Notes: generated by a model not told the origin, from the sequence alone. Counted from the whole stretch's first letter, positions 7,101-36,602 are shown. The stretch: 63,435 nucleotides of DNA, filler included, from Octopus bimaculoides (GCF_001194135.2; 8 parts of 7 records of this genome joined end to end with filler, not necessarily neighbours in it), one strand, 5' to 3'. Translations and numbers: made by a program.

Positions 7101-7582
7101 TAGCTTAGTGGTTATGGTGTTGGACTCATAACTGTAAGATTGTGGTTTCGATTCCTGGATCAGGTGAAATAATGATGATGATGATAATAATAATAATAAT
7201 AATAATAATAACATTAATAATAATAACAAGACCACTCAGAGAACGCAAACCTCTGCCAAGGCATCACCAACGTTTTCTCAATGATTAACCAGGGATGATT
7301 TTTAAAATGAAAATATCTGAAATAAACTTGACTGCTCTCACAAACGAGAATACTAAAAATGAACCCCACCACTCTCAAAAATTAAGTTAAAAAAGGCAGA
7401 AAAATAATCCAGAATCCTTATCTGGTACCAGATCAATCCCAAAATCTAATTAGTTCATGCCAGTCACGAGGCCAAACATCCCTGAAAGTTTCATCCGAAT
7501 CTATCCAACGGTTCTTGAGATAATTGACTCATCCCCTCCCCCAAAATTGCTGCCCTTGTGACATAATTTGAAACCCTTAAAA

Positions 7583-29381: not shown

Positions 29382-29456
<75 letters not shown>

Positions 29457-29639
29457 TCTCTGCGTGCCTAATTCGTAAATGTATTACGATGATACTCCAG
29501 GATGCATTGTCGTGGATGTTTCTGGGGTCGTAGGACATTTCGGGACTTTGAAAATCAGGTCTTCACTCTCACCTAATTGATCCAGCAGAGGTGATCAGGT
29601 CCCAACTTGTATCCCCAGAAGTAGTAAACCACTGGTCTA

Positions 29640-30910
29640 CCTTCTTTATCTAAAACCATCCAATGAACTTCTACGTAACGTCGGTGATGGAAAATATGGT
29701 CTTACTTTTTGCCATGCCAATAACTCCCAATCAGAGTTCCGCCATACTGGTAACCAGTGGTTCCTCTATATCTGCATGGATTTCTCCTTGGAGAAGAAGC
29801 TGTCGCTCTTTGACGTTACCATTCTGGCGGATTGGAAATTATCCCAACCTGAACATATAATCGCCATAGACCCAACCTGAGCTTTCTGCTTCAACTGTTC
29901 TCTGCCGCTTACAACTCTCTGGCGGCACTGCGCTTCTGACCCGAGCAAACTTCAATAACAATCGGAAATCGAGCAGAGATTCGACAACGCAGATGAACAC
30001 ATCAAATCGAAATCAAACACCCTGCAAGTCTGGATCCCTCACTCTTCTTGTATTTTGACACAAGATTACAGAAAAGGGTTCCATCTAATGCAACATCTGC
30101 AAGAAAGCAGCCAAGAAGAACCAAGTTATGCACTACAAATCGACCATCCCTCTGTCTATATACGAAAGGAAATCTCACGTAAAAGTGACAGGTGCAACGA
30201 TTCAGCTGACAATGCTACCAACACCAAAATGCTCCGGATATCCTACAAAACAACGGCTACCCACCATATTTCGACATAAAGCAGCATATAAACAGTAATA
30301 TATATGTTAAAGTTTATAAACGTCATAAGAAGGCCCATACTCCCAAGACAGATCCGTGCTTCGTAAAATTACCCTACTTAGACGACAGAGCTACTGCTGC
30401 AATCCATTTTGCGAACGGACTAAAGATACAGTTGATACATTCCAGTCTATCTCTAAAAACTTACTGCCCAGAAATCGTACAAATAATATCGTTGAGTGCA
30501 CACTGTCTTATGCCACTTCGACAATTTTAGAATGTGCTCGAGGGCCGACGTGGTCTATGATACAGTCTGCAGGAAGTGTTATCCGTCCTACATTGAGAGC
30601 ACCATCATCTGCATTAAAAAATGGCGAACGCTCAAACATTTTAGTTCATATTTACCCGCCAGATTTAACTGTATCTGTCAGGATCACGGAATGTAACACA
30701 GCCTGCGAACCAAGAAGGCTATCCTCATTGATAAGGTGAAACCAGTAATAAGCAAGAACTACACGAAACAGTCTATCATAACTACATCAACCCGCGCTGT
30801 CACTATACTCTCCTACGTGTATGAGCAACCATATAAGTTATATTCCTTCTCCTGTTAATCTACGTGTCTTGATGAAAGGTGTCATAACCTCCGAAATACA
30901 GAAGAAATAT
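29640..30910 (+). mobile_element. Degenerate Penelope-like element (GIY-YIG remnant and decayed hammerhead end)
   Basis: SRADVVYDTVCRKCYPSYIEST (~30520-30600) and RTKKAILIDKVKPVISK (~30705-30755) resemble PLE GIY-YIG motifs. UUGAUGA..GAAA remnant at 30869-30900. Confidence 0.6.
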
Positions 30911-30992
30911 AAGGTAAGACTTGATCTATTTTTCTCTCTTCACTTTTGTACCTAATTTCAAATTGTTTCGGCTTTTATTTTATGTAAAAACT

Positions 30993-32283
30993 GGAGGCGC
31001 AATGGTCCAGTGGTTAGGGCAGCGGACTCGCGGTAGTTCTTTTTCCAGCGAAGGCAAACAGAAATGTAATCACCAATTGTTTTAAGGCACACAAGAGAAA
31101 ACNNNNNNNNNNNNNNNNNNNNNNNNNNNNNNNNNNNNNNNNNNNNNNNNNNNNNNNNNNNNNNNNNNNNNNNNNNNNNNNNNNNNNNNNNNNNNNNNNN
31201 NNNNNNNNNNNNNNNNNNNNNNNNNNNNNNNNNNNNNNNNNNNNNNNNNNNNNNNNNNNNNNNNNNNNNNNNNNNNNNNNNNNNNNNNNNNNNNNNNNNN
31301 NNNNNNNNNNNNNNNNNNNNNNNNNNNNNNNNNNNNNNNNNNNNNNNNNNNNNNNNNNNNNNNNNNNNNNNNNNNNNNNNNNNNNNNNNNNNNNNNNNNN
31401 NNNNNNNNNNNNNNNNNNNNNNNNNNNNNNNNNNNNNNNNNNNNNNNNNNNNNNNNNNNNNNNNNNNNNNNNNNNNNNNNNNNNNNNNNNNNNNNNNNNN
31501 NNNNNNNNNNNNNNNNNNNNNNNNNNNNNNNNNNNNNNNNNNNNNNNNNNNNNNNNNNNNNNNNNNNNNNNNNNNNNNNNNNNNNNNNNNNNNNNNNNNN
31601 NNNNNNNNNNNNNNNNNNNNNNNNNNNNNNNNNNNNNNNNNNNNNNNNNNNNNNNNNNNNNNNNNNNNNNNNNNNNNNNNNNNNNNNNNNNNNNNNNNNN
31701 NNNNNNNNNNNNNNNNNNNNNNNNNNNNNNNNNNNNNNNNNNNNNNNNNNNNNNNNNNNNNNNNNNNNNNNNNNNNNNNNNNNNNNNNNNNNNNNNNNNN
31801 NNNNNNNNNNNNNNNNNNNNNNNNNNNNNNNNNNNNNNNNNNNNNNNNNNNNNNNNNNNNNNNNNNNNNNNNNNNNNNNNNNNNNNNNNNNNNNNNNNNN
31901 NNNNNNNNNNNNNNNNNNNNNNNNNNNNNNNNNNNNNNNNNNNNNNNNNNNNNNNNNNNNNNNNNNNNNNNNNNNNNNNNNNNNNNNNNNNNNNNNNNNC
32001 CTATAGCTCCACGAGGCACCGGCAGGGGATGGTGGCGAACCCTGCTGTACTCTTTCACCACAACTTTCTCTCACTCTTACTTCCTGTTTCTGTTGTGCCT
32101 GTAATTCAAAGGGTCAGCCTTGTCACACTCTGTGTCACGCTGAATATCCCCCGAGAACTACGTTATGGGTACACGTGTCTGTGGAGTGCTCAGCCACTTG
32201 CACGTTAATTTCACGAGCAGGCTGTTCCGTTGATCGGATCAACTGGAACCCTCAACGTCGTAAGCGACGGAGTGCCAACAACA
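30993..32283 (+). mobile_element. tRNA-derived SINE (GGAGGCGCAATGG family) split by other sequence and a gap
   Basis: Head at 30993-31032; body at 32000-32283 near-identical to 18055-18332. Confidence 0.75.
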
Positions 32284-32966
32284 AACTTTTATACTACTGG
32301 AAAAAGAAAAAAAGTAAAGAAAAAGCGGGAAATGTGTGCATGTGGAAAATGAAGAGGAGACATACCCTCTCCTTCTCCTTCTGTTCTGCTTGTCTGTGGC
32401 CAAACACCATGCATACATATATACATACACACACAAGTATGTATATATGAGTATGTATATATGTGTATGTATATATACATGCATATATATGTATGTGTGT
32501 ATACACACACACACACACATTCATTCGTCCGAAGTTAAAGCATGTGTGTGTGTATGCATGTTTGTATGTGTATGTGTGTTTGTATGTGTGTATGTGTGTT
32601 TGTATGTTGTGTGTGTTTCTGTATGCGTGTTTGTATGTGTGTGTGTATGATTATATGTGTATGTGTGCTTGTATGTTGTGTGTGTGTATGTGTGTGTGTG
32701 TGTGTGTGTGTGTTTTCCTTAATCGCAGCAAACCTGAATGACGTCACAAAGCGGAGCACAAACTGATGAGAAATAGCAAGAGAGAAAGAGAGGCAGAGAA
32801 TGAATGGGTAGTTGTGAAATAGTAAGACAAAGAAAGAGAAAGAAAGAGAGGGAGAAAGATCAAAGAGAGGGAAAGGTTAAAAAGAGAGTCAATTTTTTAA
32901 ACTGCTATATTATATCATTGATATTGACTTAAAGTTATTTCTGTTGTCTCCTGGATATTCTCTGAT

Positions 32967-35900
32967 ATGGTTGACCCTATTTGCGCAGACGACGTAGAAA
33001 AGTTTTTAGAAGAAAACCCAGAATTCACTAAAAACTGGATTTCTAAACACAATGCTAATACTTCTGAAGAGAAAGTTGTTGTGGTCCCGTCTTTAAGACA
33101 TTCATTTATAGACTGCGTTAAAATGATTATTTCTCGAAACAGCAGCATTGGTGTAAACAAGAATACGGTATTAACCGTAAAGGACACTTACAGAGAAATC
33201 ATGAAGGAATTGGCTTCCGAGCTTAATGAAGATAAATTGTGTTATGCGGTTCTTCAGAACACGTGTATTTTGATCCAGTCTAATAGCGCGAGTATTTATT
33301 TGGCTCGAGGTACCGGAAAGACGCGTTATCTTATATCTAAATACGTCGATGTGACCGCTACTTCTGACAGAAATGAAACCCTTCATTCAGAACCCAATAT
33401 CATTCGTATACCATTCGGTGAAGGAATCTTGGGTTATGTAGCTGAAAGTAAGCGTTCTTTGAACATCAAAGATGTTACTCGGCCTCATCATTCTTTAAGT
33501 GATGACAAATCGATTGGACTTCAAGTCCAAAGTATTCTGTGTATGCCGATTCTAAATAAATACGATAATGTAATGGGTGTCGTTAATGTCCAGAACAGCA
33601 AAGAAAATGCTAATTTTTCTTTAGAAGATGAAGCCTTATTTGAGAACTTATTATCTGTTTGTGGAATCAGTATAGAAAATGCTCATTTATTTCAAGTCTG
33701 TCTTGAAGAATTTAAACGCCACCAGTTATTACTAAAGCTCGCCAACTGCATTCTGAAAGAACAGAACAATCTACCAAAGCTTATTTCTCAAATTTTGCAC
33801 CATGCCATGGCATTGATTGACAGTAGTAATATCAGCATCTATTTAACTGACAGTAACAAAGAAACAGTTGGTCCAAATATAAATTCTAAAGTGTTTCAGT
33901 TATTGAAAGAAGAGAAAGAAGCAAAAGAAGTGACAATAGATAGGAAATTTATAAAACCTGTTGAAAATAATTTGAAGAGTGAAAATGTATTCGATGTTTT
34001 CAATTTAAAATTTTCTTCTGAAATCTCGTTTCCAAATCTCAAAGACAGTGAAATGTGGTTACTTGGTATGCCGATAAAAGATTCCACGGGAAACACTATT
34101 GGTTGTATAATGTTTGTCAGAGATTCGGTGGACGATTTTAGTGAAAATGATATCAAGATGATGAAAGCATTTACAACTTATTGCGGTTTGAGTATCTTCA
34201 ACTGTCGTTTGTACGAGAGTTCAGTTAAGTTGCTGTCTCGGGCGAAAATAATCGATGATGTTATTGCCTACAACAAGACGTGTGATCAAAAAACAATCGA
34301 TCGTTATCTATCAATGGAGATGAAATCTTCAGAACACTATCAAATATACAATTTTCACTTCGATGATTCATTATATACAGATGATGATACTGTTTTAATA
34401 TGTGCCCGGTTGCTTTTAAAGCTTGATGTTGTAAATGTTCTGAATATATCTATGGCTTATTTATATAGGTTTATTGTAACAGTGAAAGACAGCTATCGTC
34501 CAGTTACCTACCATAACTGGCGCCATGTTTTAAACGTTACACAATCAATGTTCTGTATGTTGACTACAGGTAAATTAGAGACTTACTTCACGAAATTCCA
34601 AATGATCTGTTTATTAATTGCTTGTTTGCTTCATGATCTTGAGCACAGAGGGCAGAACAATTCGTTCCAAGTGAGAATAGCATCTTCGCTTGCTACATTG
34701 TACAGTACGTCTATCTTAGAGCACTATCATATAAGTCGAAATATGATGATATTAAACAAATCCGGAACTAATATCTTTAAAAATCTTCCAGTTGAAAAGT
34801 ATCGAGAGGGTTTCAGACTAATAGAGAAAGCAATCTTTGCCACGGATCTCAAGAACCATTTTGAGAATAGGAGCATTTTTAGACACGAAATAGAAAGTGA
34901 TCACAGAACGTTTGATTCTCTTGAGAGTATTGATTTACTAATTGGCATGGTGATGACTGCAGCAGATCTGTCGGCTGCGACTAAGCCATGGGAAATTCAA
35001 AGAAAGACAGCCATTAAAGTCATATCTGAATACTTCGAGCAAGGAGAGCTGGATAAAGCTTTAAAATCTCAAGTCTTGTCTTTGGTGGATCGCGAGAAAA
35101 AATGTGAAATAACTAGGGCACAAGTTGATTTTATTGATTTTGTGTGTATGCCGATTTATAAACTTTTGGTAAAATTAGAAACGTGTTTGAGACCATTATA
35201 TGACGGGTGCATCGCAAACGGAACACACTGGCGTCTTATTGCTGCTGATAAAGAAAAGTTTAATATCGATGAAGAATTAATTGTTGCTTCACATCAGAGA
35301 TTAAGAGTTGACCAACCAAAACAGCACCAAGAATTCCGAAGTAGCTCAATGGATATTCAAACTCGAAATAACAAGATTTTAGAACCAATATTAGATAAAT
35401 TTCGATCACCTATAGCATTAAATTTAATTACAGAACATAATTCCTCCGTATGGTGTCATTCAGAACCATCGTTAATACCTAAACTAAAGAAGCTTACTAT
35501 GTTAAAATCACCAATTTCTGCTTGTCCATGGCAAGAAAGCATTGTGAAGTTTACTATGGCAGTACCTCATAAAAAAGTTGAAATGAAAGAAAAATCTTGT
35601 CAGACAGACATGTCAGTCGTCAAATTACACACCAGAAACACTGTACAAATATATAATTCCAAAGGTAAAATTACTTCAGAAGGTCCGATGAAAGTTAGCC
35701 TTCCAGTTAAAACAACTTATTCAGCCACAGTTCATTCAGATATCAATGAATTTGCAACTAACAAACACTCGAATAGCAATGCTACATCTATGCAACATCA
35801 AAATTATATCCCAACATTGGCTCTTTCACCGAATTCACTGAGAACATCAATAGACGTCAAAACATTCATAAAACATACTGATTCGACTCACCTTTTCGAT

Positions 35901-36149
35901 AATGTTGAACAAGTCGTCACCGATGATATTTATAGAGTTTCTGAAAAACTAAACAGAAAAATAGGGCAAAATTTGACTGTAAGTGATTCGATCTCTACTG
36001 TAAATGAATATAATGAGGCTCCTACTGTAGAATATGACTTTACACCAAATATTAATCAGTTTCGAAAGCGAAAATGTTTGAAGAAAATTCCCGTTAATAT
36101 GAAGGACGAGCAAGACATTTTGAAGAGTTATTTGTGTGTGATTTCATAG
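32967..36149 (+). CDS. Intronless GAF-GAF class I cyclic-nucleotide phosphodiesterase, PDE5/6/11 family, with C-terminal CaaX
   Basis: Uninterrupted 1060-aa ORF; in-frame stop 42 nt upstream. N-terminal VEKFLEENPEF; GAF-A (SILCMPILN..VMGV); GAF-B. Catalytic YHNWRH (H516/H520), HD (H556/D557), LEHYH, ATDL, AADLSA (D667), invariant Q719. Ends CVIS*. Exact orthology (PDE5, 6 or 11) not resolved. Confidence 0.95.
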   Translation: MVDPICADDVEKFLEENPEFTKNWISKHNANTSEEKVVVVPSLRHSFIDCVKMIISRNSSIGVNKNTVLTVKDTYREIMKELASELNEDKLCYAVLQNTCILIQSNSASIYLARGTGKTRYLISKYVDVTATSDRNETLHSEPNIIRIPFGEGILGYVAESKRSLNIKDVTRPHHSLSDDKSIGLQVQSILCMPILNKYDNVMGVVNVQNSKENANFSLEDEALFENLLSVCGISIENAHLFQVCLEEFKRHQLLLKLANCILKEQNNLPKLISQILHHAMALIDSSNISIYLTDSNKETVGPNINSKVFQLLKEEKEAKEVTIDRKFIKPVENNLKSENVFDVFNLKFSSEISFPNLKDSEMWLLGMPIKDSTGNTIGCIMFVRDSVDDFSENDIKMMKAFTTYCGLSIFNCRLYESSVKLLSRAKIIDDVIAYNKTCDQKTIDRYLSMEMKSSEHYQIYNFHFDDSLYTDDDTVLICARLLLKLDVVNVLNISMAYLYRFIVTVKDSYRPVTYHNWRHVLNVTQSMFCMLTTGKLETYFTKFQMICLLIACLLHDLEHRGQNNSFQVRIASSLATLYSTSILEHYHISRNMMILNKSGTNIFKNLPVEKYREGFRLIEKAIFATDLKNHFENRSIFRHEIESDHRTFDSLESIDLLIGMVMTAADLSAATKPWEIQRKTAIKVISEYFEQGELDKALKSQVLSLVDREKKCEITRAQVDFIDFVCMPIYKLLVKLETCLRPLYDGCIANGTHWRLIAADKEKFNIDEELIVASHQRLRVDQPKQHQEFRSSSMDIQTRNNKILEPILDKFRSPIALNLITEHNSSVWCHSEPSLIPKLKKLTMLKSPISACPWQESIVKFTMAVPHKKVEMKEKSCQTDMSVVKLHTRNTVQIYNSKGKITSEGPMKVSLPVKTTYSATVHSDINEFATNKHSNSNATSMQHQNYIPTLALSPNSLRTSIDVKTFIKHTDSTHLFDNVEQVVTDDIYRVSEKLNRKIGQNLTVSDSISTVNEYNEAPTVEYDFTPNINQFRKRKCLKKIPVNMKDEQDILKSYLCVIS

Positions 36150-36208
36150 TGTTTCTTGTTAACGTGGTTTGCTTAAAATGTTTCTTGTTGGATTTGTACA
36201 GAGAGTAG

Positions 36209-36248
<40 letters not shown>

Positions 36249-36319
36249 CATATCTCTTTATGTATGAATATGTATTATAGAGATCGTGCCACAACGTAGA
36301 TGTTGTTTTCTCATTGGAT

Positions 36320-36325
36320 AATAAA
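36320..36325 (+). terminator. Candidate polyadenylation signal of the PDE gene
   Basis: AATAAA ~170 nt after the stop; AT-rich context, motif only. Confidence 0.3.
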
Positions 36326-36602
36326 TAGATAATAAGCAGACGACCAGCAATCGATTTAACTTTCTAAAGATATTTGTGTTACTCTTTAATTAATAGTTAT
36401 TTTCAGCCGAATCGATAAATCATACCGAGATTTTCTTACCGAGAAATCACCGGGTCTTGACTCGAAGAATTCATCAATCCCTCGCAGACTGTTAAAGGTG
36501 ACNNNNNNNNNNNNNNNNNNNNNNNNNNNNNNNNNNNNNNNNNNNNTTAATTAATTAANNNNNNNNNNNNNNNNNNNNNNNNNNNNNNNNNNNNNNNNNN
36601 NN

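What the first reader, a model, noticed from the sequence alone, without database searches (positions are those of the whole stretch)
35250..36149. PDE ends in a CaaX box (CVIS) after a ~300-aa non-catalytic tail: PDE6-like membrane anchoring
Seen: last codons TGT GTG ATT TCA TAG (C-V-I-S-stop, 36135-36149) after a long Ser/Thr/Lys-rich tail, with a basic patch (RKRKCLKK) ~25 aa upstream. The N-terminus VEKFLEENPEF recalls vertebrate PDE6 N-termini. Established: vertebrate PDE6 catalytic subunits and Drosophila PDE6 are prenylated through CaaX boxes, and X=S favours farnesylation. Inference: a membrane-tethered cGMP PDE in an animal whose main retinal cascade is Gq-based, hinting at a separate cGMP signalling compartment (cilia, sperm, extraocular photoreception).
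Basis: partly seen in the sequence, partly recalled or inferred. Interest (0 to 1): 0.7.

Follow-up and report, generated by a model that had tools for sequence, protein, structure and literature searches.

The report
Octopus cGMP phosphodiesterase with lipid-anchor tail
This is an intact, transcribed octopus gene for a cGMP-degrading enzyme whose tail ends in a conserved lipid-anchor signal; that signal is the ancestral state of this enzyme group in animals, and the less expected point is that the gene has no introns and sits in a tandem cluster of fast-evolving copies.

Summary
An uninterrupted 1060-codon ORF (32967-36149, +) encodes GAF-A, GAF-B and a class I phosphodiesterase catalytic domain. 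A roughly 290-residue tail, predicted disordered, ends RKRKCLKK...LCVIS-stop.

The CaaX box is not chance. It is identical in two orthologues, and most octopus paralogues keep a CaaX together with the upstream R-R/K-R-K-C motif. The last 40 codons are the most constrained part of the tail (dN/dS 0.11-0.16, against 0.58-1.11 for the rest).

"PDE6-like" is too specific. Basic residues plus CaaX occur across invertebrate PDE5/6-type enzymes: Drosophila Pde6, sea-urchin sperm PDE5, amphioxus, molluscs and cnidarians. By sequence the closest solved structure is human PDE5.

It is in Octopus bimaculoides, has a single exon, and lies among at least four single-exon paralogues within 23 kb. O. vulgaris has at least six. 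The clade is only 35-41% identical to the otherwise well-conserved canonical family.

Expression is restricted. One of many O. bimaculoides RNA runs holds it, and that contig stops 130 nt before the stop codon, which I could not explain. RNA from a sister species runs through CVIS and the stop.

Prenylation, membrane location and the suggested testis or sperm role are all inferred. It is a new member of a known kind, of modest interest.

The parts
32888..32966 (+). Minimal 5' untranslated region
   Evidence: The RNA contig of run X13 starts at 32888 and is colinear with the genome. No ATG lies between 32888 and 32967. A GA-rich tract and a (TG/TA)n microsatellite lie just upstream, so the true start may be further 5'.
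32967..36149 (+). Single-exon coding sequence, 1060 aa plus TAG
   Evidence: ORF list. The public gene call equals the ORF length in O. bimaculoides and in the O. sinensis orthologue. The RNA contig shows no joint across 32888-36019.
32994..33026 (+). N-terminal motif VEKFLEENPEF (residues 10-20)
   Evidence: Present in canonical PDE5/6-type and in PDE11 sequences, so it is family-wide and not specific to PDE6.
33192..33686 (+). GAF-A domain (about residues 76-240)
   Evidence: Pfam GAF at 89-236, E = 1.3e-18. Aligns to PDE5 GAF-A. AF2 pLDDT about 75-90.
33687..34256 (+). Linker helix and GAF-B domain (about residues 241-430)
   Evidence: Second GAF stretch in Pfam. Aligns to PDE5 GAF-B. The AF2 model shows a beta-sheet core with pLDDT about 75-90.
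34509..35207 (+). Class I PDE catalytic domain (residues 515-747)
   Evidence: Pfam PDEase_I, E = 1.2e-71. It contains H516/H520, H556-D557, H560, D627, D667 and Q719. These are invariant columns in the 30-sequence alignment and align to PDE5 H613/H617/H653/D654/H657/D764/Q817. The modelled catalytic domain matches PDE5 crystal structures with TM 0.89-0.95.
35277..36062 (+). Fast-evolving tail, predicted disordered (residues 771-1032)
   Evidence: AF2 pLDDT is 25-42 from residue 782 onward. dN/dS is 0.58-1.11 and amino-acid identity is 59-78% between species. It cannot be aligned between paralogues.
36063..36086 (+). Basic motif with a conserved cysteine, RKRKCLKK (residues 1033-1040)
   Evidence: Conserved as R-R/K-R-K-C-(L/V/A)-(K/R)-K in orthologues and in paralogues that are otherwise only about 37-50% identical to the window protein.
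36135..36146 (+). CaaX box C-V-I-S (residues 1057-1060)
   Evidence: Sequence. Identical in two orthologues. Paralogues end CTIS, CKIS, CMIF, CVVC/CVIC or CAIA. The last 40 codons have dN/dS 0.11-0.16 in the two deeper comparisons. A sister-species RNA contig is unchanged across 36094-36168.
36147..36149 (+). Stop codon TAG
   Evidence: It is read as a stop in the sister-species RNA contig, with no A-to-G change visible at contig level.
36209..36246 (.). (TA)19 microsatellite in the 3' flank
   Evidence: Tandem Repeats Finder. It breaks all assemblies laid here.

Best explanation
The window holds a working, single-exon gene of Octopus bimaculoides for a GAF-A/GAF-B/catalytic phosphodiesterase of the PDE5/6 type. 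It most likely hydrolyses cGMP.

The folded part is followed by a flexible tail of about 290 residues. Only the last ~40 residues of that tail are under strong constraint. They carry a basic R-K-R-K-C motif and a terminal CaaX box (CVIS).

The inferred mechanism has three steps. Farnesyltransferase modifies C1057. The VIS tripeptide is then removed and the new C-terminus is methylated. The lipid, helped by the nearby basic residues, holds the enzyme on a membrane at the end of a long tether, so that cGMP is degraded locally.

This anchor is inherited from the ancestral animal PDE5/6 enzyme. It is not copied from, or specific to, vertebrate PDE6.

The gene belongs to a cephalopod-type clade of intronless copies arranged in tandem clusters. 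That clade most likely arose from one retrocopied mRNA followed by local duplication. It has evolved much faster than the canonical family.

Expression is restricted to few tissues, probably the male germ line.

Shown: the ORF, domains, catalytic residues, conservation, intronless structure, clustering and transcription. Inferred: prenylation, membrane location, cGMP preference, retrocopy origin and testis/sperm role.
For: Domains and catalytic residues:
- Pfam finds GAF (two stretches) and PDEase_I at 1e-71.
- Human PDE5 aligns over residues 76-770 at 1e-109. The aligned residues include H613, H617, H653, D654, H657, D764, the glutamine switch Q817, and Q775, A767 and W853.
- The metal ligands and the glutamine switch among these are invariant columns in a 30-sequence alignment.
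- The AF2 model gives confident GAF and catalytic folds and a tail with pLDDT 25-42. The modelled catalytic domain matches PDE5 crystal structures with TM 0.89-0.95.

Anchor:
- LCVIS is identical in three species.
- Paralogues share the RKRKC motif and a CaaX.
- dN/dS of the last 40 codons is 0.11-0.16, against 0.58-1.11 for the rest of the tail and 0.35-0.46 for the catalytic domain.
- Basic residues plus CaaX also end Drosophila Pde6, sea-urchin sperm PDE5 and the amphioxus, Aplysia, oyster and cnidarian enzymes. The PDE11 sequences read (Narcine, Coccinella) lack it.
- Half of the 357 homologues fetched have Cys at position -4.
- Prenylation of Drosophila PDE6 is published (Day et al. 2008, PMID 18503409). 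I saw this only as a reference-list entry.

Gene structure:
- The gene range equals the CDS length for this gene and for its relatives in three octopus species.
- Each tblastn match is one unbroken segment of about 770 residues.
- The sea-urchin gene of the canonical family spans 79 kb and has at least 12 exons.
- Four paralogues lie within 23 kb in O. bimaculoides. At least six lie in about 90 kb in O. vulgaris.

Clade: 100% bootstrap support, and 35-41% identity to a canonical family whose members are 54-88% alike.

Transcription:
- A 3135-nt RNA contig at depth 110, with no joint, in one O. bimaculoides run.
- A sister-species RNA contig that runs through CVIS and the stop codon.
- No reads in three other deep RNA runs, and 0.00 word share in about 15 further runs.
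- A gene with the same product name is testis-only in O. sinensis.
Against: - No lipid has been shown. CaaX rules are only predictive.
- The only O. bimaculoides RNA contig stops at 36019, 130 nt before the stop codon. No contig of that run covers 36020-36207. So the CaaX-coding end is not yet seen in RNA of this species. Contigs show presence, not absence.
- Overall dN/dS is 0.40-0.57, high for an enzyme. That is consistent with relaxed constraint.
- The lysine of the GAF-A NKFDE motif is displaced (N-S-K instead of N-K), so regulation by cGMP binding is uncertain.
- Two family gene models (P0162, P0163) end without a CaaX.
- The tissue of the expressing run is hidden by coded ids. The O. sinensis testis gene may be a different paralogue.
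- No retrocopy scars were seen: there is no poly(A) remnant in the 350 nt downstream. No multi-exon parent gene was identified.
Confidence: 0.72

Rival explanations
1. It is a true functional counterpart of vertebrate PDE6: a G-protein-activated, membrane-bound effector of a ciliary-opsin or other cGMP light cascade in extraocular or ciliary photoreceptors.
For: - It has the same domain order and a C-terminal CaaX.
- Full-length Foldseek hits are led by PDE6 cryo-EM structures, but these make up most of the full-length GAF-GAF-PDE structures among the hits.
Against: - By sequence PDE5 is the better match (1e-109 against 1e-94).
- In the tree the clade lies outside every canonical group.
- The inhibitory gamma subunit that defines PDE6 regulation is absent from invertebrates (PMC4906994).
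- The CaaX is ancestral, not PDE6-specific.
- The gene is absent from nearly all O. bimaculoides RNA runs.
- The family evolves fast and duplicates often. That is unlike a core transduction enzyme.
Confidence: 0.06
2. It is a decaying or neutral retrocopy. The ORF and CaaX persist only because too little time has passed.
For: - It is intronless.
- dN/dS is high overall (0.40-0.57) and about 1 in most of the tail.
- The region is repeat-rich and full of assembly gaps.
Against: - A 3.2-kb ORF is intact in three species at dS up to 0.25, and in paralogues only about 37-50% identical to it.
- dN/dS is 0.35-0.46 in the catalytic domain and 0.11-0.16 in the last 40 codons.
- Every catalytic residue is retained.
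- RNA depth is about 110 in one run.
Confidence: 0.04
3. In O. bimaculoides the mature transcript ends or is rejoined near 36019, so the protein actually made lacks the basic motif and the CaaX.
For: The X13 RNA contig (depth 110) ends at 36019 with 3 unmatched letters. No contig of that run lies on 36020-36207, even at 80% likeness. The run holds 96% of the ORF's sampled words, which matches loss of exactly this piece.
Against: - No joint and no loose end are reported at 36019.
- There is no GT at that place and no AATAAA/ATTAAA just upstream.
- A cut there would leave no stop codon.
- The missing 40 codons are the best-conserved part of the tail.
- Five or more sister-species RNA contigs pass 36019, and one reaches 36168.
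- Assemblers clip short terminal branches, and by the tool's own caveat contigs do not show absence.
Confidence: 0.08
4. The C-terminal module does not target the plasma or flagellar membrane. The R-K-R-K stretch would act as a nuclear localisation signal and the CaaX as a nuclear-envelope or endomembrane anchor, as in lamins. Alternatively, the conserved cysteine in RKRKC would be a second lipidation site.
For: - The motif R-R/K-R-K-C-L-K-K is conserved across paralogues, including its cysteine.
- It lies 17-24 residues from the CaaX. That is further than the basic stretch that adjoins the CaaX in K-Ras4B (my knowledge).
Against: - The canonical relatives have plain Lys/Ser-rich stretches directly before the CaaX.
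- The fly enzyme is reported as membrane-associated through prenylation (Day et al. 2008). This is from my own knowledge; I saw the paper only as a reference-list entry.
- There is no direct evidence either way.
Confidence: 0.12

Closest known systems
Drosophila melanogaster PDE6 (CG8279), a prenylated cGMP-specific PDE (Day et al. 2008, Biochem J 414:363)
   Same: - GAF-A/GAF-B/catalytic order.
- A long low-complexity C-terminal tail that ends in basic residues plus a CaaX. The Drosophila orthologues read here end KRSKLCSLL and KRSKLCALL.
- No gamma subunit.
   Different: - The fly CaaX ends in Leu, which predicts geranylgeranyl; here it ends in Ser, which predicts farnesyl.
- The fly protein is a typical member of the conserved canonical clade (54-57% identical to snail or urchin), whereas the octopus protein is 34-36% identical.
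- The octopus gene is single-exon and clustered. From my own knowledge, not checked here, the fly gene is a single multi-exon gene.
Sea-urchin sperm PDE5 (Strongylocentrotus purpuratus; P0123)
   Same: - A PDE5/6-type enzyme that ends KKNKSSLCSVI.
- It is named by its source as a sperm enzyme. That parallels the suspected male-germline expression here.
   Different: - The urchin gene spans 79 kb and has at least 12 exons.
- The sequence is only about 34-35% identical to the window protein.
- Sperm expression of the octopus gene is not shown.
Vertebrate PDE6 catalytic subunits (rod alpha/beta, cone alpha')
   Same: Domain order, C-terminal CaaX, and the overall fold.
   Different: - PDE6 has a short C-terminus. 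It is controlled by the vertebrate-only gamma subunit and by transducin (PMC4906994).
- Its sequence match is weaker than that of PDE5.
- The octopus protein has a 290-residue disordered tail.
Human PDE5A
   Same: The best sequence match among solved structures (1e-109, residues 76-770). Identical metal ligands and cGMP-selectivity residues.
   Different: - From my own knowledge, not tested here, PDE5A has no CaaX and is soluble. The held PDE5A sequence stops at residue 868.
- The GAF-A NKFDE motif is intact in PDE5 but altered here (N-S-K).
Ras-type membrane anchors (H-Ras CVLS; K-Ras4B polybasic plus CVIM)
   Same: - A CaaX with aliphatic a1 and a2 residues.
- X = Ser as in H-Ras.
- A basic cluster that could serve as a second membrane signal (established knowledge).
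   Different: - The basic cluster lies 17-24 residues upstream instead of adjoining the CaaX.
- The cargo is a large enzyme, dimeric in its relatives (my knowledge), on a long disordered tether.

Membership tests
Class I cyclic nucleotide phosphodiesterase (Pfam PDEase_I) | HD-type catalytic domain with the conserved His/Asp metal ligands | tested here: met
   PF00233 at 1.2e-71, well above its cut-off. H516, H520, H556, D557, H560, D627 and D667 are invariant columns and align to the PDE5 ligands.
GAF-containing PDEs of the PDE5/6/11 group | Two N-terminal GAF domains followed by the catalytic domain, with closest similarity to PDE5/6/11 rather than PDE2/10 | tested here: met
   Pfam finds two GAF stretches. 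PDB ranking is PDE5 1e-109, PDE6 1e-94 to 1e-90, PDE2 1e-72, PDE10 1e-53. Database hits are named cGMP-specific PDE or PDE11.
GAF-containing PDEs of the PDE5/6/11 group | cGMP-selectivity residues of PDE5 (Q817 switch held by Q775, plus A767 and W853) | tested here: met
   Q719, Q678, A670 and W755 align to these residues. This is sequence evidence only; substrate preference was not measured.
GAF-containing PDEs of the PDE5/6/11 group | NKFDE signature in GAF-A | tested here: inconclusive
   N210 ... F217 ... D221-E222 are present, but Lys is replaced by Ser with a Lys one position later (QNSKEN at residue 209).
Vertebrate photoreceptor PDE6 | Orthology to the PDE6A/B/C clade | tested here: not met
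   PDE5 scores higher than any PDE6 chain. The octopus clade falls outside the canonical PDE5/6-type group in the neighbour-joining tree. No vertebrate PDE6 sequence was in that tree. That the PDE6 paralogues arose within vertebrates is from PMC4906994.
Vertebrate photoreceptor PDE6 | Regulation by the inhibitory gamma subunit and by transducin | not testable with these tools
   Gamma-subunit genes were not found in any invertebrate genome by Lagman et al. 2016 (PMC4906994). I could not search the octopus genome for them.
Vertebrate photoreceptor PDE6 | C-terminal CaaX box | tested here: met
   CVIS at 36135-36146. The feature is shared with non-PDE6 relatives, so it does not discriminate.
Canonical invertebrate PDE5/6-type enzymes (Drosophila Pde6, urchin sperm PDE5) | Groups with this clade in a phylogeny | tested here: inconclusive
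   The cephalopod-type clade is sister to the canonical clade, but the canonical clade has only 57% bootstrap support. It does not nest within molluscs. Identity is 35-41%, against 54-88% within the canonical clade. A long branch is likely.
Canonical invertebrate PDE5/6-type enzymes (Drosophila Pde6, urchin sperm PDE5) | Basic stretch followed by CaaX at the end of a low-complexity tail | tested here: met
CaaX prenylation substrates | Cys at position -4, aliphatic a1/a2, and an X residue that selects the transferase | tested here: met
   C-V-I-S. From established knowledge, Ser at X is a farnesyltransferase preference. The motif sits at the free end of a region predicted to be disordered.
CaaX prenylation substrates | Covalent isoprenoid on the cysteine, followed by -aaX cleavage and methylation | not testable with these tools
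   This needs biochemistry.
Processed retrogene | No introns where relatives have many | tested here: met
   The coding sequence is a single exon here and in all octopus paralogues. The urchin relative has at least 12 exons over 79 kb.
Processed retrogene | Poly(A) remnant, target-site duplications, and an identifiable multi-exon parent gene | tested here: not met
   There is no A-run in the 350 nt after the stop codon. Target-site duplications were not searched for. No cephalopod protein appears among the best 120 relatives of the snail canonical enzyme. Scars would be expected to be erased at this age, so this weakens the retrocopy origin but does not exclude it.

The most novel reading that the evidence does not exclude
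Octopuses, and perhaps cephalopods generally, may have lost the conserved multi-exon PDE5/6 gene that other animals keep. In its place would be a retrocopy that then multiplied into tandem clusters of at least five fast-evolving lineages. These would be lipid-anchored cGMP phosphodiesterases expressed in the male germ line. That would be a case of retrogene replacement followed by diversification of sperm cGMP signalling, possibly driven by reproductive competition.
Probability: 0.25. Interest if true: 0.55.

Novelty: new member of a known kind. Interest (0 to 1): 0.3.

Why it matters
The lipid-anchor signal itself adds little, because prenylated PDE5/6-type enzymes are known from flies and vertebrates. 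This survey shows the signal from cnidarians to amphioxus. That is useful mainly as a correction: the CaaX is ancestral, it was lost in vertebrate PDE5, and it is not a PDE6 invention.

The clustered, intronless, rapidly diverging octopus family is more interesting. I found no description of it in the searchable literature. If the canonical gene is truly missing, it would be a clear example of retrogene replacement in a core second-messenger enzyme. It would also offer a route into cGMP signalling in cephalopod sperm, which is almost unstudied.

The conserved RKRKC-plus-CaaX module at the end of otherwise unconstrained tails is a compact, testable targeting signal.

Tried and rejected
- **Logan contig L003 as transcript evidence for the CaaX:** rejected. 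The contig is bounded by the same two microsatellites as the genome, so it is probably DNA.
- **3' end in O. bimaculoides RNA:** the X13 contig stops at 36019. Lowering likeness to 80% found nothing beyond it. A separate search with the last 188 nt found only a sister-species RNA run. This remains unresolved.
- **Test for a canonical PDE5/6 gene in octopus:** I tried to lay octopus runs on a canonical mollusc transcript (L004). I also tried to test co-expression of the neighbouring paralogues (L008).
- **Intron check in molluscan canonical genes:** look-ups of P0006 and P0048 found no record. I used the sea-urchin gene instead.
- **N-terminal 75 residues against the PDB:** no PDE hit.
- **Rfam and tRNA scans of the piece:** nothing found.
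- **Day et al. 2008:** the paper could not be read. Only its citation was verified.
- **Literature searches for an octopus PDE expansion or retrogene:** nothing relevant.
- **Identity of the expressing runs:** run ids are coded, so the tissue of X13 could not be learned. The match of the organism C runs to the O. maya testis study (PMC6341066) is only a guess from year, number and size of runs.
- **First read-laying run:** failed on a filtered microsatellite stretch.


Full report
**What is in the sequence.** The piece 29382-36502 holds one long open reading frame, 32967-36149 on the + strand, 1060 codons, ending TGT GTG ATT TCA TAG at 36135-36149.
- Pfam finds a GAF domain (two stretches; best stretch residues 89-236) and a PDEase_I catalytic domain (residues 515-747, E = 1.2e-71).
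- Against solved structures, the best match is human PDE5 over residues 76-770 (E = 1.1e-109). Next come cone and rod PDE6 (2e-94 to 6e-90), then PDE2 and PDE10.
- In that alignment the general acid and the metal ligands are all present: PDE5 H613, H617, H653, D654, H657 and D764 correspond to H516, H520, H556, D557, H560 and D667 here.
- The glutamine switch is present (Q817 = Q719), as are the residues that hold it in the cGMP-selective orientation (Q775, A767, W853).
- The metal ligands and the glutamine switch are invariant columns in a 30-sequence family alignment.
- The one irregularity is in GAF-A, where the NKFDE signature reads N-S-K...F...D-E.

- The non-catalytic tail is about 290 residues (35277-36146).
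- RKRKCLKK is residues 1033-1040 (36063-36086), 17-24 residues before the CaaX cysteine C1057.
- The N-terminal motif VEKFLEENPEF is residues 10-20.
- 'Ser/Thr/Lys-rich' is only mildly true: 28.6% in the tail against 21.1% in the folded part.
- An AlphaFold2 model built on the family alignment gives confident GAF-A, GAF-B and catalytic domains (pLDDT mostly 80-97). From residue 782 to the end pLDDT is 25-42, so the tail is predicted to be disordered.
- The modelled catalytic domain superposes on PDE5 crystal structures with TM 0.89-0.95. The full-length hits are led by PDE6 cryo-EM structures, but these make up most of the full-length GAF-GAF-PDE structures among the hits, so this does not discriminate.

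**Is the CaaX more than chance?** Yes.
- The O. sinensis orthologue (88% identical) and a third species (80%) both end ...LCVIS.
- I made codon alignments of the three orthologues and computed Nei-Gojobori dN/dS.

| Region | dN/dS |
|---|---|
| Whole gene | 0.40-0.57 |
| Catalytic domain | 0.35-0.46 |
| Tail, residues 771-1020 | 0.58-1.11 |
| Last 40 codons (two deeper comparisons) | 0.11-0.16 |

- So most of the tail drifts almost freely, while its end is the most constrained part of the C-terminal region.
- The octopus paralogues cannot be aligned in their tails. Most still end with the same module, R-R/K-R-K-C-(L/V/A)-(K/R)-K, then 15-25 residues, then a CaaX: CTIS (twice), CKIS, CMIF, CVVC/CVIC and CAIA.
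- Two gene models (P0162, P0163) end without a CaaX. I could not tell whether that is real or an annotation problem.

**Is it 'PDE6-like'?** Only in the sense that vertebrate PDE6 kept an older feature.
- The canonical invertebrate PDE5/6-type enzymes end in basic residues plus CaaX: Drosophila Pde6 (KRSKLCSLL, KRSKLCALL), sea-urchin sperm PDE5 (KKNKSSLCSVI), amphioxus (CAIL), Aplysia (CAVS), a land snail (CSLS), oyster (CVLL) and two cnidarian-type sequences (CNIV, CNIL).
- The PDE11 sequences read lack it.
- Prenylation of the fly enzyme and its binding to a prenyl-binding protein were published by Day et al. 2008. I could verify only the citation, not read the paper.
- The N-terminal motif is also family-wide. 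It occurs in canonical enzymes and in PDE11 (Narcine VEAFLDRHPDL, Clytia VEAWLDKHEDF). The first 75 residues alone find no PDE in the PDB.
- The feature that sets PDE6 apart, its inhibitory gamma subunit, has not been found in any invertebrate (PMC4906994).

- The window comes from Octopus bimaculoides, chromosome record CM046624.1, about 10.42-10.44 Mb.
- The public gene call spans exactly the ORF, so there is no intron in the coding sequence. The RNA contig of run X13 is colinear with the genome from 32888 to 36019 with no joint.
- Within 23 kb there are four PDE paralogues: one on the minus strand, one ending CTIS, the window gene, and a 1091-residue gene 7 kb downstream. Many assembly gaps truncate two of them.
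- The O. sinensis orthologue is also single-exon, with PDE genes on both sides.
- O. vulgaris has at least six single-exon copies within about 90 kb of one chromosome, three of them more than 90% identical.
- Each tblastn match of the window protein to these loci is one unbroken segment of about 770 residues.
- By contrast, the sea-urchin member of the canonical family spans 79 kb with at least 12 exons.

**Phylogeny (neighbour-joining, 764 columns, 200 bootstraps).**
- The octopus genes form one clade with 100% support and at least five paralogue lineages.
- Two sequences of unknown species join them, also at 100%. One (P0163) is a single 3.8-kb ORF on its contig. The gene structure of the other (P0165) was not looked up.
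- This clade is sister to the canonical PDE5/6-type clade, which itself has only 57% support. It does not nest among molluscs.
- Its members are 35-41% identical to the snail enzyme. Canonical enzymes from cnidarians to amphioxus are 54-88% identical to that snail enzyme.
- No cephalopod protein appears among the best 120 relatives of the snail enzyme.
- The simplest reading is one retrocopy, then tandem duplication and rapid divergence, possibly with loss of the parent gene. The loss is not proven. No retrocopy scars remain.

**Expression.**
- Of the O. bimaculoides RNA runs listed, only X13 holds the gene, as a 3135-nt contig at depth about 110.
- Three deep runs kept as raw reads have no read on the ORF. 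About 15 others hold none of its words.
- In a sister species about 96% identical in DNA, at least seven RNA runs hold it at low depth (six of them from one 2018 sample). One contig runs from 35700 to 36168, through the CVIS codons and the stop, with no change after 36093.
- That argues against splicing or editing away the anchor in that species.
- The number, year and small size of those runs fit the O. maya testis study (PMC6341066). Run names are coded, so this is a guess.
- In O. sinensis a gene with the same product name is expressed in testis (FPKM 13.9) and not in ovary (0) (PMC11202624). Which paralogue it is remains unknown.

**An unexplained point.** The X13 contig ends at 36019 with three unmatched letters, and nothing from that run covers 36020-36207, even at 80% likeness.
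- There is no joint, no GT and no standard poly(A) signal at that place.
- A transcript ending there would have no stop codon.
- I think an assembly artefact is most likely: a short terminal branch clipped between a variable site and the (TA)19 repeat at 36209.
- Even so, the CaaX-coding end has not been seen in RNA of this species.

**Mechanism proposed.**
- Shown: an intact, conserved, transcribed gene for a GAF-GAF-PDE with all catalytic and cGMP-selectivity residues, a tail predicted to be disordered, and a conserved basic-plus-CaaX end.
- Inferred from established CaaX rules: farnesylation of C1057 (X = Ser), removal of VIS, and carboxyl methylation. Membrane binding would be reinforced by the basic residues, giving local cGMP breakdown at a membrane.
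- The conserved cysteine inside RKRKC, and the distance of that motif from the CaaX, leave room for a second lipid or for a different target such as an endomembrane or the nuclear envelope.
- A role in sperm is plausible by analogy with sea-urchin sperm PDE5 and from the restricted, possibly testis-specific expression. It is not shown.

**Verdict.** The lipid-anchor signal is real and under selection, but it is the ordinary ancestral state of this enzyme group. The gene is already named in public annotation as a cGMP-specific PDE-like protein. The intronless, clustered, fast-evolving family is the more noteworthy feature and appears undescribed in the literature I could search.

Noticed in passing
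window 29382-36502 in context: L008 1-23183 (O. bimaculoides CM046624.1, 10,418,409-10,441,591): The gene is one of four PDE paralogues within 23 kb. The others are a minus-strand copy, a copy ending CTIS, and a 1091-residue copy 7 kb downstream. Eight runs of N lie in the region and truncate two of the neighbours, so the real copy number may be higher.
   Followed up: partly
window 36019-36207: The only O. bimaculoides RNA contig for this gene (run X13, depth about 110) stops at 36019 with 3 unmatched letters. Nothing from that run covers the last 130 nt of the ORF or the first 60 nt after it. Sister-species RNA contigs run past this point.
   Followed up: partly
window 35976-36003: A direct repeat ACTGTAA...ACTGTAA flanks 21 nt that encode SDSISTV. 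O. sinensis lacks exactly these 7 residues, which looks like a slippage deletion. The first repeat also reads ACT|GTAAGT, a perfect splice-donor consensus, but the RNA contig reads straight through it.
   Followed up: partly
window 30976-31037 and 32000-32284: These are two halves of one interspersed repeat of about 370 nt with a tRNA-like head (GGAGGCGCAATGGTCCAGTGGTTAGGG...). In other octopus loci the two halves lie about 60 nt apart (L005, about 7145-7512), and copies are 78-96% identical to the window's. In the window they are separated by the N run at 31103-31999, so the assembly gap sits inside a repeat. ARAGORN and Rfam call nothing here.
   Followed up: partly
window 32417-32713 and 32790-32890: A complex (TA/TG)n microsatellite is followed by a GA-rich tract directly upstream of the first transcribed base seen (32888). 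The same arrangement is kept in O. sinensis (85.9% identity over 32540-32965).
   Followed up: no
window 29382-29461: (CT)40 microsatellite at the edge of the piece.
   Followed up: no
window 36320-36325: This is the first AATAAA after the stop codon, about 170 nt downstream and beyond the (TA)19 repeat. No RNA evidence reaches it.
   Followed up: no
tails of paralogues P0004, P0163, P0164 and P0165 (not in the window): A second shared tail motif occurs in several paralogues. It has the form RR(S/T)S..DE(L/I/V)...R(R)(S/A)S..V(I/F)(P/Q)PP(N)P(I/V)R and contains sites that resemble basophilic kinase sites. The window protein has at most a degenerate version (FRSSSMDIQ...).
   Followed up: no
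O. vulgaris OX597837.1, 28.756-28.846 Mb (L002, L007): At least six single-exon PDE genes lie here, including three 1135-residue copies more than 90% identical to each other (ending CVVC or CVIC). This indicates very recent tandem duplication.
   Followed up: partly
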